From positions 1 through 64,000 of the IMG/VR virus record IMGVR_UViG_3300028883_000032: a DNA stretch of 64,000 bases. One strand, written 5' to 3'. Made by a program: the position numbers and the translations under genes. This document shows, piece by piece, positions 3,795-9,723 of the stretch. The notes beneath the pieces are model-generated. The model was given only the letters and a program-made list of their open reading frames with translations, did not search any database and was not told the origin of the DNA. How positions within the stretch are numbered: position 1 is the first letter of the stretch; each line of letters starts with the position of its first letter.

Positions 3795-4211
3795 ATGAAA
3801 ACAGAACATTTACAGCAATTACTTGTGTCCGGACAGTTTATAGGATCTCACATGTGCCTTGCCAAAGACATAGGATCAAACGGAAATCTCTTTGGGGGTA
3901 ACATGCTAGCTTGGGCAGACGAAATGGGTGCTATTTTTGCTAAAAAGTTTACTGGAGAACCAAAGCTCGTAACTGTTCAAATGGACGCGGTTGAATTCAC
4001 TGTTCCAGTACATGAAGGCGAAATAGTTGATTTCTATGCCGCTAACCCCAAACCCGGCCATACCAGTTTAACGTTCACTCTTGTTGTTGCCAAACCGAAC
4101 AATGCCGACGGGGTAAGACAAATTGTATTTACAACGCGATTTGTTTTCGTGGCTGTCGGCGATGATGGGCACTCCAAACCAATTGAAAGGTTTGCAGAAA
4201 AGCGCCCATAG
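3795..4211 (+). CDS. acyl-CoA thioesterase (hotdog fold)
   Basis: NGNLFGGNMLAWADE motif, VTVQMDAVEF, GHTS, FVFVAV; 3' end overlaps the tRNA. Confidence 0.85.
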   Translation: MKTEHLQQLLVSGQFIGSHMCLAKDIGSNGNLFGGNMLAWADEMGAIFAKKFTGEPKLVTVQMDAVEFTVPVHEGEIVDFYAANPKPGHTSLTFTLVVAKPNNADGVRQIVFTTRFVFVAVGDDGHSKPIERFAEKRP

Positions 4212-4274
4212 TTCAGTGGTTAGAACAGCGGACTCTAAATCCGTGTGTCCTCGGTTCAAGTCCGAGTGGGCGCA
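4202..4274 (+). tRNA. amber suppressor tRNA (CUA anticodon)
   Basis: GCGCCCA/TGGGCGC acceptor, anticodon stem GCGGA/TCCGT with loop CT-CTA-AA, T-loop TTCAAGT. Confidence 0.85.
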
Positions 4275-4287
4275 CAAAGGAGACCTA

Positions 4288-8474: not shown

Positions 8475-8780
8475 TTGTACACAGAAGACGATCAACAAAT
8501 AGTGTGTCGCAATAGTTAGCGAATCCTTAACGGCTGGATATAATGGACCAGCTGGGAGCGGCGAGTGGGTGACGAATCGGAAGTCCCACCAAATACTTAT
8601 TATGGCATAAGAAGATGAGATAGCTGACCGAAACCTCTTGGGATTCATGTGTACACTCCTACAACACGTGAAAGTAGGAAGCTGTCTTTTCAGAGATTTA
8701 TGCGAGGTCCATACTGATGTAGCCACCGTGTCAGTGTATCTTTGTGTAGATCGAGGAGTGTTATAGCTAACGGTGGCTTT
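8475..8780 (+). ncRNA. candidate structured ncRNA (unassigned)
   Basis: No + strand ORF; stems GAATCC/GGATTC, GCTGG/CCAGC, TCCTAC/GTAGGA, AGCCACCGT/ACGGTGGCT; shares TGGG..GTGGGTGA..CCCACC with RNAs at 35.6 and 37.7 kb. Confidence 0.45.
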
Positions 8781-8821
8781 GTTTTTTTGGCGGAGTGGCG
8801 GAATTGGCAGACGCGCTAGAC

Positions 8822-9358
8822 TTAACTCAAAGAATTTAGAATGTCATAAGCATTCTTTACTACATCACGAACTAGTGTTTTACCACCAGAGTAAACCCTT
8901 ACGATTGCGTTTTTTCTATTTACGTCCTTTTGAAATTTAGCGTTAGGGTAAATATCTAAGAAACCCTTAGCATCGCTTTTAGATTTTGCCAACACAACCA
9001 ATCTTATACTTTTGGCGCTATATACTTCAGTCAGCATTGAAGTTATTAAGTCTATTAAGTTTGGATCTTGGTTGCAAAATTGAAATATATTAGCTTTTTC
9101 TGTACGATACCCTTCACACAGATAAGCAATATGGCCTGCTATGCTAAGGTTAGTCTTTAATAAAGATTGATCCGGGTTTTGATGACTTACTCTGGGAAGA
9201 TAATTATATTCAGATGCACTACGCATAGAAATATTGTGAAATTTTAAATACTTACGAACTGTTTTGTGATCACATTTTAAAAGCATTCCAATTTCATAAG
9301 GATTTAATTTATCTTCTAAGTAGAGTTTTTCTAGTTCATGTTTAGTAAAATTCTTCAT
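8822..9358 (-). CDS. intron-encoded HTH + degenerate LAGLIDADG-like putative homing endonuclease
   Basis: 178 aa from MKNFTKHELEK; HTH (LYLEDKLNPYEIGMLLKCDHKTVRKYL) then IAYLCEG..FQFCNQDPNLI; antisense to the intron. Confidence 0.6.
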   Translation of the reverse strand: MKNFTKHELEKLYLEDKLNPYEIGMLLKCDHKTVRKYLKFHNISMRSASEYNYLPRVSHQNPDQSLLKTNLSIAGHIAYLCEGYRTEKANIFQFCNQDPNLIDLITSMLTEVYSAKSIRLVVLAKSKSDAKGFLDIYPNAKFQKDVNRKNAIVRVYSGGKTLVRDVVKNAYDILNSLS

Positions 9359-9626
9359 CCTGAGCCTTTGGTTAGAAATAACTAATTGAATTCGGCTATA
9401 TGCGGGAAACTCATAAAGCCTACAGTACCATACGTATACCAATAGTATACTAAATTGGAAATACGTTGTCAAGTAAAAATCTGTAGGATGTACAATTGAC
9501 AATCCGCAGGGAAGCCTGTAATGGCCCCTCAGAGACTAAACGCCGAACCCTTAACAGGTAATGCTGAAGGAGATGATATAGTCCAGACCACAACAGAATA
9601 TGGCTTGTGAAAGCAAGTGTGGTAAG
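8824..9626 (+). mobile_element. group I self-splicing intron (~803 nt) in the tRNA anticodon loop
   Basis: Core elements ATGCGGGAAACTC (P), AATCCGCAGGGAAG (Q), TCAGAGACTA (R), GATATAGTCC (S); ends in G; splice point +/-1 nt uncertain. Confidence 0.88.
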
Positions 9627-9723
9627 AGGATCTAGTGTCTTCGGACGTGTGGGTTCGAGTCCCACCTCTGCTACCATTAAGATAAACTCATATGAGACAT
9701 ATGCAAAGCGACATAAAAACAAT

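What the first reader, a model, noticed from the sequence alone, without database searches (positions are those of the whole stretch)
8789..9676. Group I intron in phage tRNA-Leu(UAG) carrying an antisense endonuclease-like ORF
Seen: group I core motifs lie in the 3' ~270 nt. The 5' ~540 nt is filled by a 178-aa ORF on the opposite strand (the only credible minus-strand gene in the window), whose TAA stop straddles the 5' splice site. Known: group I introns occur in bacterial tRNA anticodon loops (e.g. Leu U^AA), and intron homing endonucleases are normally in the sense orientation. Inference: a mobile tRNA intron with an antisense HTH-LAGLIDADG-like gene that needs its own promoter.
Basis: partly seen in the sequence, partly recalled or inferred. 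Interest (0 to 1): 0.7.

Follow-up and report, generated by a model that had tools for sequence, protein, structure and literature searches.

The report
Phage tRNA intron with backwards endonuclease gene
A large marine-sediment phage carries a self-splicing group I intron inside its only tRNA-Leu(UAG) gene, and the intron holds a LAGLIDADG-type homing endonuclease gene written on the opposite strand, a layout kept in at least ten divergent phages and not found described for phages or bacteria in my literature searches.

Summary
Positions 8789-9676 hold a split class II tRNA-Leu(UAG). The 5' exon is 8789-8823, an 803-nt group I intron is 8824-9626 (Rfam RF00028, 71.1 bits against a cut-off of 50), and the 3' exon is 9627-9676.

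The intron's L1 loop is filled by a 178-aa ORF on the minus strand (8825-9358). Its TAA stop (8822-8824) straddles the 5' splice site, and its ATG lies directly beside the internal guide sequence, CCUGAG.

The ORF is a real gene. There are about 40 full-length relatives at 29-58% identity, and codon position 3 varies most. A confident model (pLDDT 93) shows an N-terminal helix-turn-helix plus a single LAGLIDADG domain (Z 9.4 to an intein homing endonuclease). E82-G83 are invariant at the end of the motif helix. A symmetric homodimer is predicted (score 0.68, best control 0.00).

The same anatomy recurs in nine other phage loci, always in tRNA-Leu(UAG) between U34 and A35. Free-standing relatives also lie next to tRNA-Leu(UAG) genes. 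A sigma-70-like antisense promoter sits at a fixed distance in 6 of the 9 loci scanned.

Splicing, transcription and cleavage were not tested, because no RNA run was listed. I rate it a new variant of a known kind.

The parts
8789..8823 (+). 5' exon of tRNA-Leu(UAG): acceptor 5' strand, D arm, anticodon stem 5' strand, C32 U33 U34
   Evidence: ARAGORN -i gives the gene start at 8789. The spliced product folds as tRNA-Leu(tag). Anticodon stems co-vary between the two exons across 9 loci.
8824..9626 (+). Group I intron, 803 nt, preceded by U34 and ending in omega-G 9626
   Evidence: Rfam RF00028, 71.1 bits. Boundaries come from the in-silico splice. A DNA contig in the source sample skips exactly 8824-9626, recorded as joint 8823->9627.
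8822..9358 (-). 178-aa HTH + single-LAGLIDADG homing-endonuclease gene. Coding part 8825-9358, TAA stop 8822-8824 across the 5' splice site. It fills loop L1 of the intron.
   Evidence: homologues; invariant H76 E82 G83 N96 Y113 G159 N169. (model, pLDDT 93). (LAGLIDADG fold). (homodimer). (codon-position pattern).
9359..9364 (+). Internal guide sequence CCUGAG. GAG pairs with C32 U33 U34 (P1, with a U34-G wobble). U9361 pairs with intron base A8824. CCU can pair with A35 G36 G37 of the 3' exon (P10).
   Evidence: CTGAGC is invariant in the 9 aligned introns. There is one compensatory change: L026 has UUU in the exon and GAA in the guide. The assignment is by inspection. RNAalifold paired this stretch elsewhere.
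9368..9385 (+). P2 hairpin with GAAA tetraloop (9375-9378)
   Evidence: 7 of its 8 pairs show compensatory changes.
9391..9547 (+). P3 (9391-9396 with 9542-9547), enclosing P4 (9402-9406 with 9503-9507), P5 with its P5a/P5b extension (9410-9502), P6 (9508-9529) and the 5' strand of P7 (GACUA, 9534-9538)
   Evidence: RNAalifold on 9 introns: P3, P5, P5a and P6 have compensatory changes. The P7 strands are invariant and complementary.
9444..9472 (-). Candidate promoter of the endonuclease gene: TTGACA (9472-9467), 17 nt, TATACT (9449-9444). It lies inside the P5 extension. The -10 element ends 85 nt before the ATG.
   Evidence: 11 of 12 consensus matches. A match this good arose in 0.25% of shuffles of the region. 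A site of at least 9 of 12 at the same distance (78-91 nt) occurs in 6 of 9 loci, against 0.25-4% per locus in shuffles.
9549..9626 (+). P8 (9549-9570), P7 3' strand (UAGUC, 9579-9583), P9 (9587-9591 with 9619-9623) with an inner hairpin and GAAA loop (9609-9612), omega-G 9626
9627..9676 (+). 3' exon of tRNA-Leu(UAG): A35 G36 G37 A38, anticodon stem 3' strand, long variable arm, T arm, acceptor 3' strand, A73, CCA

Best explanation
This is a mobile group I intron of the bacterial tRNA type. It resembles the IC3 subgroup: a 3-bp P1, and GAAA loops on P2 and P9. It interrupts the phage's only tRNA-Leu(UAG) gene between U34 and A35.

Inferred mechanism on the + strand: the tRNA cluster is transcribed, the ribozyme core (9359-9626) folds, and the guide GAG pairs with C32-U33-U34 across the 537-nt L1 loop. 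The intron then splices itself out to give a normal class II tRNA-Leu(UAG).

Inferred mechanism on the - strand: a separate transcript starts from a promoter embedded in the P5 extension. It is translated into a 178-aa protein with an N-terminal helix-turn-helix and one LAGLIDADG domain. The protein dimerises through its motif helix, which brings the two invariant E82 residues together. As a homodimer it would cut the uninterrupted anticodon stem-loop DNA of intron-less tRNA-Leu(UAG) genes. That DNA is a natural near-palindrome (CTAGA-CTTAGGA-TCTAG). The targets would be co-infecting phages, and repair from the intron-bearing copy would spread the intron and its gene. The carrier's own gene is immune because the intron splits the site.

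The antisense orientation uncouples endonuclease expression from the strongly transcribed tRNA precursor. It also keeps ribosomes off the ribozyme RNA.

Shown: the RNA family match, the boundaries, the conserved anatomy, protein conservation, the fold, the predicted dimer, the association of the family with tRNA-Leu(UAG), and the existence of intron-less sites.

Inferred: splicing, antisense transcription, cleavage, the target and homing.
For: RNA: RF00028 at 71.1 bits. 33 of 61 consensus pairs carry compensatory changes across 9 introns. U at -1 and G at omega occur in all loci. There is one P1 compensatory change, UUU/GAA in L026.

tRNA: in-silico splicing gives tRNA-Leu(tag) in 9 of 9 loci. 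Anticodon stems co-vary across the 800-nt intron: CTAGA/TCTAG, CCAGA/TCTGG, CGGGC/GCCCG, CAGGT/ACCTG, CAAGA/TCTTG. The genome has no other tRNA-Leu(UAG).

Protein: 20 homologues down to 46% identity by word search. The exhaustive search found 280 proteins at E<=0.001, of which about 15 among the best 150 listed are full-length. E82-G83 are invariant at the C-terminal end of helix 70-82. VIA-align gives TliVMA intein endonuclease Z 9.4, I-DmoI 7.3, E-DreI 6.8, WhiA 6.8, I-CreI 5.6. AlphaFold DB clusters named DOD/LAGLIDADG homing endonuclease match down to E 1.8e-6. The homodimer score is 0.68 in the median run, against 0.00 for the best of 3 controls; the three runs agree in at least 97% of contacts; partner pLDDT is at least 81. 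That mark was reached by 20 of 30 solved homodimers and 1 of 23 solved monomers. The interface is residues 68-82, 96-107 and 171-178.

Context: the intron-embedded antisense layout occurs in the window, L005, L008, L010, L011, L013, L014, L020, L026 and L027. Free-standing relatives sit beside tRNA-Leu(UAG) in L007, L012, L022, L023, L155, L157 and L158.

Target availability: more than 112 viral contigs carry the uninterrupted GCTAGACTTAGGATCTAG. A contig in the source sample joins 8823 to 9627.

Promoter.
Against: - No RNA data. None was listed for this sequence, so neither splicing nor the antisense transcript has been seen.
- No sequence profile recognises a LAGLIDADG domain in the protein: Pfam on all 33 family members and a PDB profile search. 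The assignment rests on a predicted structure with mid-range Z scores.
- LAGLIDADG folds can be non-nucleolytic, as in WhiA and in maturases.
- P1 is only 3-4 bp and nearly invariant, so its assignment has one supporting covariation.
- The promoter motif is missing in 3 of 9 loci. The loci are related, so the chance estimate is too optimistic, and the distance window for it was chosen after seeing the sites. The phage's own transcription signals are unknown.
- The half-sites of the proposed target are separated by an odd number of base pairs, unlike I-CreI-type sites.
Confidence: 0.8

Rival explanations
1. The protein is a domesticated LAGLIDADG protein rather than a homing endonuclease. It could be a maturase that helps the intron fold across its 537-nt L1 loop, or a WhiA-like DNA-binding regulator acting at tRNA-Leu(UAG) genes.
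For: WhiA, a LAGLIDADG fold joined to an HTH with no nuclease activity, is among the best structural matches (Z 6.8 and 6.2). No LAGLIDADG sequence profile matches. A very long L1 might need help to form a 3-bp P1. The family stays beside tRNA-Leu(UAG) even without an intron.
Against: The acidic residue plus glycine at the end of the motif helix (E82-G83) is invariant in 33 sequences down to 29% identity. The two E82 residues are predicted to meet at the dimer axis, as in active enzymes. Free-standing copies beside intact tRNA genes have no intron to mature. The patchy spread over many unrelated phage contigs fits a selfish mobile gene.
Confidence: 0.12
2. The endonuclease gene is a separate free-standing mobile gene that merely landed in the intron's L1 loop. 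It moves on its own, and the intron is a passive safe harbour rather than a co-mobile unit.
For: Homologues occur without any ribozyme core, in three other layouts beside tRNA-Leu(UAG) (L012/L155, L007, L157/L158). The gene has its own orientation and a candidate promoter. On the protein tree, intron-embedded and free-standing copies are interleaved.
Against: In ten divergent loci the gene occupies exactly the same place in the intron. In nine of them the stop codon sits on the splice site. In all ten the start lies 0-5 nt before the guide sequence CCUGAG. This points to long co-inheritance of gene and intron. Any cut at the anticodon loop, repaired from an intron-bearing donor, would copy both together. 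The rival differs from the best explanation mainly in history, not in present mechanism.
Confidence: 0.05
3. The locus is a decaying relic: the intron no longer splices, the tRNA is a pseudogene, and the ORF is no longer expressed.
For: No expression data. The single-sequence fold of the core is not clearly more stable than shuffles (z -1.58).
Against: All core helices are intact and co-vary. The exons co-vary to keep the anticodon stem. The ORF is intact in all ten intron loci, with a purifying-selection pattern over the nine compared. This is the genome's only tRNA-Leu(UAG).
Confidence: 0.03

Closest known systems
[quoted passage not shown]
   Same: Group I intron in the anticodon loop of a tRNA-Leu, at the same position: after U34 in the loop CUU/a...g/A. 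U at -1 and G at omega. P1 is made only of loop bases, so the anticodon stem can persist.
   Different: The isoacceptor here is UAG, not UAA. The host is a phage, not a cell or plastid. The classical intron is about 250 nt and has no ORF; this one is 803 nt with a gene in L1. Formal subgroup assignment was not tested.
Azoarcus tRNA-Ile(CAU) IC3 intron (PMC13168695)
   Same: From my own knowledge of that ribozyme: a three-base guide sequence pairs with the last three exon bases, and GAAA tetraloops cap P2 and P9. Here the guide is GAG against CUU, and GAAA loops lie at 9375-9378 and 9609-9612.
   Different: Azoarcus has a short L1 and no ORF. It is inserted after position 36 of another tRNA. 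The resemblance was read from the alignment and not tested with a subgroup model.
I-Ssp6803I in the Synechocystis tRNA-fMet intron (Bonocora and Shub 2001, cited in PMC3984707)
   Same: It is the one established case of a homing endonuclease gene inside a bacterial tRNA group I intron. Its target is the anticodon region of the intron-less tRNA gene.
   Different: From my own knowledge, that enzyme is a PD-(D/E)XK nuclease encoded in the sense orientation. Here the enzyme has a LAGLIDADG fold with an HTH, is encoded antisense, and sits in a phage.
I-DirII, antisense His-Cys box endonuclease gene in a Didymium iridis nuclear rDNA group I intron (Johansen et al. 2006, as described in PMC3073962)
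   Same: A homing endonuclease gene on the strand opposite to its host intron, expressed from its own promoter.
   Different: I-DirII is eukaryotic and nuclear: it uses a Pol II promoter, a spliceosomal intron and polyadenylation. It is a His-Cys box enzyme in an rRNA host gene. Here the setting is a phage, the candidate promoter is sigma-70-like and lies inside a ribozyme peripheral helix, and the enzyme has a LAGLIDADG fold.
Homodimeric single-motif LAGLIDADG endonucleases (I-CreI, I-MsoI, I-CeuI)
   Same: One alpha-beta-beta-alpha-beta-beta-alpha domain per chain. A predicted symmetric dimer forms through the motif helix. An acidic residue followed by Gly ends that helix. The presumed target is near-palindromic.
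   Different: No detectable sequence similarity. The motif reads S-I-A-A-H-I-A-Y-L-C-E-G. There is an extra N-terminal HTH_23-type domain. Z scores are only 5-5.6 to these chains; the best match is to an intein endonuclease domain.
Free-standing phage endonucleases beside their target genes: T4 SegB in the tRNA cluster (PMC2330249), and F-CphI beside cyanophage psbA (from my own knowledge)
   Same: The free-standing relatives (L012, L155, L007) lie directly beside the gene they presumably target, in phage tRNA clusters.
   Different: SegB is a GIY-YIG enzyme. The relatives found here overlap the tRNA gene on the opposite strand and end at its anticodon loop.

Membership tests
Group I intron (Rfam RF00028) | Covariance-model score above the curated gathering score | tested here: met
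   71.1 bits against 50, E 5e-16, full model 1-253. Nine related loci score 55-79 bits.
Group I intron (Rfam RF00028) | Conserved core helices P3-P9 supported by covariation | tested here: met
   RNAalifold on 9 introns: 33 of 61 pairs have compensatory changes, in P2, P3, P5, P5a, P6, P8 and P9. P4 and P7 are invariant but complementary. L026 shows a compensatory change in P4.
Group I intron (Rfam RF00028) | U at -1 in a U-G wobble of P1, and G at the last intron position | tested here: met
   U34 precedes the intron and G ends it in all ten loci. G9362 of the invariant CUGAGC can pair with U34. There is one compensatory change (C32-G to U32-A) in L026.
Group I intron (Rfam RF00028) | Guanosine-dependent self-splicing | not testable with these tools
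   No RNA run was listed. It needs an in-vitro assay.
IC3 / bacterial tRNA intron class Leu.3Ug | Insertion in the anticodon loop after the third loop base of a tRNA-Leu | tested here: met
   The splice lies between U34 and A35 and the product is tRNA-Leu(tag) in 9 of 9 loci. The class is defined in bioRxiv 10.1101/2020.01.27.920355.
IC3 / bacterial tRNA intron class Leu.3Ug | Subgroup-specific structure (formal IC3 classification) | not tested
   I only noted a 3-bp P1 and GAAA loops on P2 and P9 by inspection. No subgroup model was available.
LAGLIDADG (DOD) homing endonuclease | alpha-beta-beta-alpha-beta-beta-alpha core fold | tested here: met
   Model pLDDT 93, elements H70-82, E92-96, H99-112, E118-124, E141-144, E152-157, H160-177. 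The best matches to the C-terminal domain in solved structures are all LAGLIDADG proteins, Z 9.4 to 5.0. Named DOD/LAGLIDADG clusters match in AlphaFold DB.
LAGLIDADG (DOD) homing endonuclease | Motif helix ending in a conserved acidic residue plus Gly and forming the dimer or domain interface | tested here: met
   E82 and G83 are invariant in 33 sequences. The predicted homodimer interface centres on residues 68-82, with E82 facing E82'.
LAGLIDADG (DOD) homing endonuclease | Match to a curated LAGLIDADG sequence profile (Pfam LAGLIDADG_1/2/3 and relatives) | tested here: not met
   No LAGLIDADG family appears for the window protein or among the 25 families most often matched by the 33 members at E<=1. 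No LAGLIDADG chain was found by the PDB profile search. Membership is therefore at the level of fold, as a new subfamily.
LAGLIDADG (DOD) homing endonuclease | Mg2+-dependent double-strand cleavage leaving 4-nt 3' overhangs at a long specific site | not testable with these tools
   Needs purified protein and a substrate.
Mobile (homing) intron | Intron-plus and intron-minus alleles of the same site exist in the population | tested here: met
   More than 112 viral contigs have the uninterrupted 18-nt site. A contig in the source sample bridges 8823 to 9627. These are tRNA genes of other genomes, not shown to be the same phage.
Mobile (homing) intron | The encoded enzyme cuts the intron-minus allele and the intron is copied in | not testable with these tools
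   Indirect support only: the whole protein family is tied to tRNA-Leu(UAG) genes.
Antisense-encoded intron endonuclease (I-DirII type) | ORF on the strand opposite to the intron, with its own promoter | tested here: inconclusive
   Orientation is met in ten loci. For the promoter there is only a consensus match, 11 of 12, recurring in 6 of 9 loci. There are no transcript data.

The most novel reading that the evidence does not exclude
The antisense layout may be an evolved regulatory design rather than an accident of insertion. A peripheral ribozyme helix (the P5 extension) would double, on the other DNA strand, as the promoter of the endonuclease gene. The complement of the guide sequence and the P2 flank would double as its ribosome-binding region. 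The endonuclease mRNA would be fully complementary to L1 of the pre-tRNA. Endonuclease expression, splicing and the supply of tRNA-Leu(UAG) would then be mutually coupled through transcriptional collision or RNA-RNA pairing. The family, with its free-standing, tRNA-overlapping and intron-embedded forms, would show the steps by which a free endonuclease gene and an intron become one mobile element.
Probability: 0.3. Interest if true: 0.8.

Novelty: new variant of a known kind. Interest (0 to 1): 0.64.

Why it matters
A 2014 review of bacterial group I introns stated that all phage introns seen to that date lie in protein-coding genes, despite the many phage tRNA genes (PMC3984707). My searches of the paper library found no later report of a phage tRNA group I intron, or of an antisense endonuclease gene in a bacterial or phage intron. 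No homologue exists in 50,697 GenBank phage records.

This locus and its relatives show four things:
- Large environmental phages do carry such introns in tRNA genes. This genome has at least two.
- An endonuclease gene can be kept on the opposite strand, tiled exactly between the splice site and the guide sequence, over long divergence.
- There is an unrecognised LAGLIDADG subfamily with an HTH domain that current profiles miss.
- tRNA finders run with default settings miss these genes, so phage tRNA repertoires are under-counted.

If the enzyme is active, it would be a compact homodimeric nuclease with a defined, widespread natural target. It would also offer a tractable system for studying how intron and endonuclease join.

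Tried and rejected
- ARAGORN with default settings misses the gene. It was found only with introns allowed, and in the window the intron was then misplaced by a few bases and the gene mislabelled SeC.
- A single-sequence AlphaFold model was useless (pLDDT 43). The 33-sequence alignment was needed.
- Foldseek against PDB on the whole two-domain model gave no significant match, with tubulin and FtsZ at the top as noise. The domain-level signal came from VIA-align and AlphaFold DB.
- Sequence profiles (Pfam, PHROGs, PDB) recognise only the HTH. The weak PHROG 'HNH endonuclease' hits cover the HTH only and are not evidence for an HNH domain.
- RNA evidence: no RNA run was listed. Only the source DNA run was available.
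- A search for ORF-less copies of this intron in tRNA-Leu(UAG), using a pattern with a short L1, found only unrelated introns in protein-coding genes.
- RNAalifold paired the invariant CUGAGC with the P7 3' strand region. I rejected this in favour of P1/P10 because of the position, the U-G wobble and the L026 compensatory change.
- The minimum-energy fold of the core alone is not significantly more stable than shuffles (z -1.58). That is expected for a pseudoknotted ribozyme and was not used as evidence.
- TAG recoding was considered because of the CUA-anticodon tRNA. Stop-to-stop frames give no sign of it.
- The tree of the protein family could not settle whether the intron-embedded or the free-standing state is ancestral. 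There are many unresolved forks and many members of unknown context.
- I did not run the count of structure pairs or build a covariance model of the 300-column alignment, for reasons of string length and calibration time.
Full report
WHERE THE WINDOW COMES FROM

The window is the first 64 kb of a 206,856-bp IMG/VR virus record that CheckV rates 100% complete. The only public run that holds it is a marine sediment metagenome. The genome has 39.6% G+C and about 30 tRNA genes, plus a ribonucleotide reductase, a DNA ligase and glycosyltransferases. No similar sequence exists in 50,697 GenBank phage records, either as DNA or as protein.

CHECKING THE OBSERVATION

Rfam's group I intron model matches 9345-9604 on the + strand at 71.1 bits, against a gathering score of 50. 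ARAGORN with default settings sees no tRNA here. With introns allowed it calls a split tRNA at exactly 8789..9676.

Reading the sequence:
- The 5' exon is 8789-8823. It holds the acceptor strand GGCGGAG, the D arm, the anticodon stem strand CTAGA and the loop bases C32 U33 U34.
- The 3' exon is 9627-9676. It holds A35 G36 G37 A38, the stem strand TCTAG, a long variable arm, the T arm, the acceptor strand, A73 and CCA.
- Joining the two in a script gives an 85-nt class II tRNA-Leu(UAG).
- The intron is therefore 8824-9626, 803 nt, preceded by U and ending in G.

The minus-strand ORF of 178 aa runs from ATG 9358 to 8825. Its TAA stop is the complement of 8822-8824, that is U33, U34 and the first intron base. 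In the window, 65 ORFs of at least 120 aa lie on the + strand and 4 on the - strand. The other three minus-strand ORFs lie mostly or wholly under long + ORFs.

THE INTRON RNA

I collected related loci in three ways: through the ORF's homologues, through a conserved core pattern, and through look-ups of more distant homologues.

Nine further loci have the same anatomy: L005 (identical in L006), L008 (L009), L010, L011, L013, L014 (also L017, L025, L028), L020, L026 and L027. They score 55-79 bits against RF00028 on the strand opposite to the ORF.

In all ten loci the host gene is a tRNA-Leu(UAG) split between U34 and A35. For the nine aligned loci:
- The intron is 789-813 nt and the ORF 177-181 aa.
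- The stop codon lies on the 5' splice site.
- In-silico splicing gives tRNA-Leu(tag).

The exons differ between loci, but the two strands of the anticodon stem change together across the intron: CTAGA/TCTAG, CCAGA/TCTGG, CGGGC/GCCCG, CTAGC/GCTAG, CAGGT/ACCTG, CAAGA/TCTTG. This is hard to explain unless the spliced tRNA is used.

Aligning the nine cores (A2) and folding the alignment gives P2, P3, P4, P5, a P5a/P5b extension, P6, P8 and P9. 33 of 61 pairs carry compensatory changes. The P7 strands (GACUA 9534-9538, UAGUC 9579-9583) are invariant and complementary. P2 and P9 end in GAAA loops.

Directly after the ORF's start codon lies the invariant CUGAGC.
- I read GAG (9362-9364) as the guide that pairs with C32-U33-U34, with U34 opposite G.
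- I read the preceding CCU as the P10 partner of A35-G36-G37.
- This is a three-base P1, as in the Azoarcus tRNA intron (from my own knowledge of that ribozyme).
- It fits the fact that only loop bases are free to pair when the anticodon stem stays formed.
- One compensatory change supports it: L026 has UUU in the exon and GAA in the guide.
- RNAalifold paired this stretch elsewhere, so the assignment is mine.

It follows that the ORF fills loop L1. It is tiled exactly between the splice site and the guide sequence.

THE PROTEIN

The word-index search found 19 homologues of 175-200 aa at 46-58% identity. The exhaustive search found 280 proteins at E<=0.001. About 15 of the best 150 listed are full-length relatives. 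The rest share only the N-terminal 50 residues, often as 3-11 tandem repeats; these are HTH_23-type modules.

In the alignment of 33 full-length members (A1), H76, E82, G83, N96, Y113, G159 and N169 are invariant. The stretch S-I-A-A-H-I-A-Y-L-C-E-G resembles a LAGLIDADG helix ending in an acid followed by Gly.

Across the nine aligned intron-borne genes, pairwise differences per site are 0.41, 0.29 and 0.60 at codon positions 1, 2 and 3. This is the pattern of a translated gene.

No sequence profile sees more than the HTH. The AlphaFold model built on A1 is confident (pLDDT 93). It shows three short helices (6-40) followed by an alpha-beta-beta-alpha-beta-beta-alpha domain (70-177).

VIA-align against 48,161 solved chains gave the following best matches for the C-terminal domain:
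- TliVMA intein endonuclease domain, Z 9.4
- I-DmoI, Z 7.3
- E-DreI, Z 6.8
- WhiA, Z 6.8 and 6.2
- PI-PkoII, I-Vdi141I, I-CreI (5.6), I-MsoI and I-CeuI

Every one of these is a LAGLIDADG protein. The remaining top rows match only the N-terminal HTH. AlphaFold DB clusters named DOD/LAGLIDADG homing endonuclease match down to E 1.8e-6.

Two copies are predicted to form a symmetric dimer. The median score is 0.68, against 0.00 for the best of three controls. The runs agree in at least 97% of contacts, and partner pLDDT is at least 81. The mark was reached by 20 of 30 solved homodimers and 1 of 23 solved monomers. The interface is residues 68-82, 96-107 and 171-178, with E82 next to E82'. This is the geometry of I-CreI-type homodimers. 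The pass may partly reflect the model's memory of such complexes.

I conclude that the protein is a single-domain LAGLIDADG protein of an unrecognised subfamily with an added HTH, and that it is probably catalytically competent. Nuclease activity is inferred, not shown.

WHAT IT PROBABLY CUTS

Every member whose context I read lies in or beside a tRNA-Leu(UAG) gene, with one exception.
- Ten loci are intron-embedded.
- In L012, L022, L023/L024 and the distant L155 (38% identity), the gene is free-standing and convergent with an intact tRNA-Leu(UAG) that has a short variable arm. Its last 16 or so codons run antisense through the tRNA's 3' half, and the stop is again U33-U34-A35.
- L007 has a remnant of a 5' exon, then the gene, then 73 nt and an intact tRNA-Leu(UAG), with no ribozyme core. 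Its protein is the nearest relative of the window's protein.
- In L157 and L158 the gene follows another ORF and diverges from a tRNA-Leu(UAG).
- The exception is L156, where the neighbour is a class-II-like tRNA with a UGG anticodon.

This association points to the tRNA-Leu(UAG) gene as the target. The uninterrupted anticodon arm is a near-palindrome, which suits a homodimer, and the intron sits at its centre.

In the source sample one contig joins 8823 directly to 9627, and several others continue from the 5' exon into intron-less 3' halves. Substrates for homing therefore exist. The target and the homing step remain inference.

EXPRESSION OF THE ANTISENSE GENE

The consensus scan finds TTGACA-17-TATACT on the minus strand at 9472..9444, an 11 of 12 match. 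It lies inside the P5 extension and ends 85 nt before the ATG. My script, using the same rules, finds a site of at least 9 of 12 with its -10 element ending 78-91 nt before the ATG in 6 of the 9 intron loci: window, L005, L008, L011, L014 and L027.

In dinucleotide shuffles:
- Such a site falls in that distance range in 0.25-4% of trials per locus.
- An 11 of 12 site falls anywhere in the window's region in 0.25% of trials.

Three cautions apply. The loci are related. The distance range was chosen after seeing the sites. The phage's own transcription signals are unknown. I therefore treat the promoter as a good candidate, not a finding.

A purine-rich stretch (AAAGG, AAGGAGG, AGAGG, GAAGG) lies 9-13 nt before the ATG in 6 of 9 loci. 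It is the complement of the sequence between the guide and P2. No RNA run was listed.

WHY ANTISENSE

This part is inference. A sense ORF in L1 would place ribosomes on the RNA that must bring a 3-bp P1 together across 537 nt. It would also tie endonuclease level to a strongly transcribed tRNA cluster. The opposite orientation uncouples the two.

The same genome offers a contrast. Just beyond the window (64043-64799), a tRNA-Ser(UGA) gene carries a 667-nt group I intron (49.2 bits) with a sense-strand HNH ORF in the same part of the intron. Sense ORFs in tRNA introns are therefore tolerated in this phage.

COMPARISON WITH WHAT IS KNOWN

[quoted passage not shown] The classical Leu intron sits at the same loop position, CUU/a...g/AAAA (bioRxiv 10.1101/2020.01.27.920355).
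- One bacterial tRNA intron with an endonuclease gene is established: I-Ssp6803I in tRNA-fMet (cited in PMC3984707).
- Antisense endonuclease genes are known in nuclear rDNA introns: I-DirII, with a Pol II promoter (PMC3073962).
- The 2014 review says that all phage introns then known lie in protein-coding genes, despite the many phage tRNA genes (PMC3984707).
- My eight library searches found no later report of a phage tRNA group I intron, or of an antisense endonuclease gene in a bacterial or phage intron. The library is incomplete, so this is not proof of absence.

I file the RNA as a member of the group I family. All testable features were met; activity was untestable. I file the protein as a LAGLIDADG protein by fold only, because the curated sequence profiles were tested and not met. 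The whole is a new variant of a known kind, the mobile group I intron.

VERDICT

- Confidence in the mechanism as stated is about 0.8.
- Interest is 0.64. It rests on a conserved and unusual gene layout, a host-gene class thought to be avoided in phages, and an unrecognised endonuclease subfamily. It stops short of a new principle.

Noticed in passing
G000:C1:64043-64799 (43 nt past the window end; locus L002 1021-1777): A second split tRNA in the same phage: tRNA-Ser(UGA) with a 667-nt group I intron (Rfam 49.2 bits, just under the cut-off). It carries a sense-strand HNH endonuclease ORF of 143 aa (L002 1085-1516).
   Followed up: partly
window 4202-4275: A tRNA with a CUA anticodon (amber-suppressor type; ARAGORN labels it Pyl; Rfam tRNA 71.8 bits). 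Stop-to-stop frame statistics give no sign that TAG is recoded in this genome. A similar tRNA lies in L026 2612-2686.
   Followed up: partly
There is no group I match there and the call looks doubtful.
   Followed up: no
G000:C1:146154-146467 (L003): A weak group I candidate (21.2 bits) with no tRNA nearby. [quoted passage not shown]
   Followed up: no
L012 2501-3103; L022; L023; L155 1083-1725: Free-standing homologues of the ORF are convergent with an intact tRNA-Leu(UAG) of 77-78 nt with an unusual short variable arm. The ORF's last 16 or so codons are antisense to the tRNA's 3' half, and its stop codon is U33-U34-A35 of the anticodon loop. This layout is shared by proteins only about 40% identical to each other.
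   Followed up: partly
L007 2850-3600: A remnant of a tRNA 5' exon, then the antisense ORF, then 73 nt and an intact tRNA-Leu(UAG), with the ribozyme core gone. This protein is the nearest relative of the window's protein, which suggests core loss with the gene retained.
   Followed up: partly
L014 4020-4289 (also L017 543-812); L027 3148-3451; L020 4575-4798: Related phages carry further intron-bearing tRNAs. L014 has a tRNA-Thr(UGU) with a 194-nt ORF-less group I intron (36 bits). L027 has another group I match (50.6 bits). L020 has a possible split tRNA-Trp. tRNA introns seem common in this phage group.
   Followed up: no
L156 1513-1602: A 90-nt tRNA with a long variable arm (class II body) but a UGG (Pro) anticodon lies 43 nt from the start of an ORF homologue. 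It is the one family member not next to a tRNA-Leu(UAG).
   Followed up: no
L028 (DAOQAF010000001.1, 204 kb): A 204-kb contig with the same intron and ORF as L014 is deposited as a 'Bacteroidales bacterium' MAG. It is probably a phage genome binned with its host or binned wrongly. It may be a hint to the host.
   Followed up: no
L015 2454-3560; L019; L029-L042: Introns sharing this core's P3-P4 and P4'-P6 sequence lie in protein-coding genes of other phages. L015 carries a sense-strand ORF with a Vsr-like FNGCFWH motif upstream of the core.
   Followed up: no
window 8722-8788: An inverted repeat, AGCCACCGT...ACGGTGGCT, followed by TTTGTTTTTTT ends one base before the tRNA's first base. It might be a + strand terminator or a processing hairpin. 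The loop is about 40 nt, and the terminator scan did not call it.
   Followed up: no
window 8795-8822: The Logan contigs of the source run break inside the 5' exon, and word depth rises 3-7 fold over both exons. Other tRNA-Leu genes in the sample share these words.
   Followed up: partly
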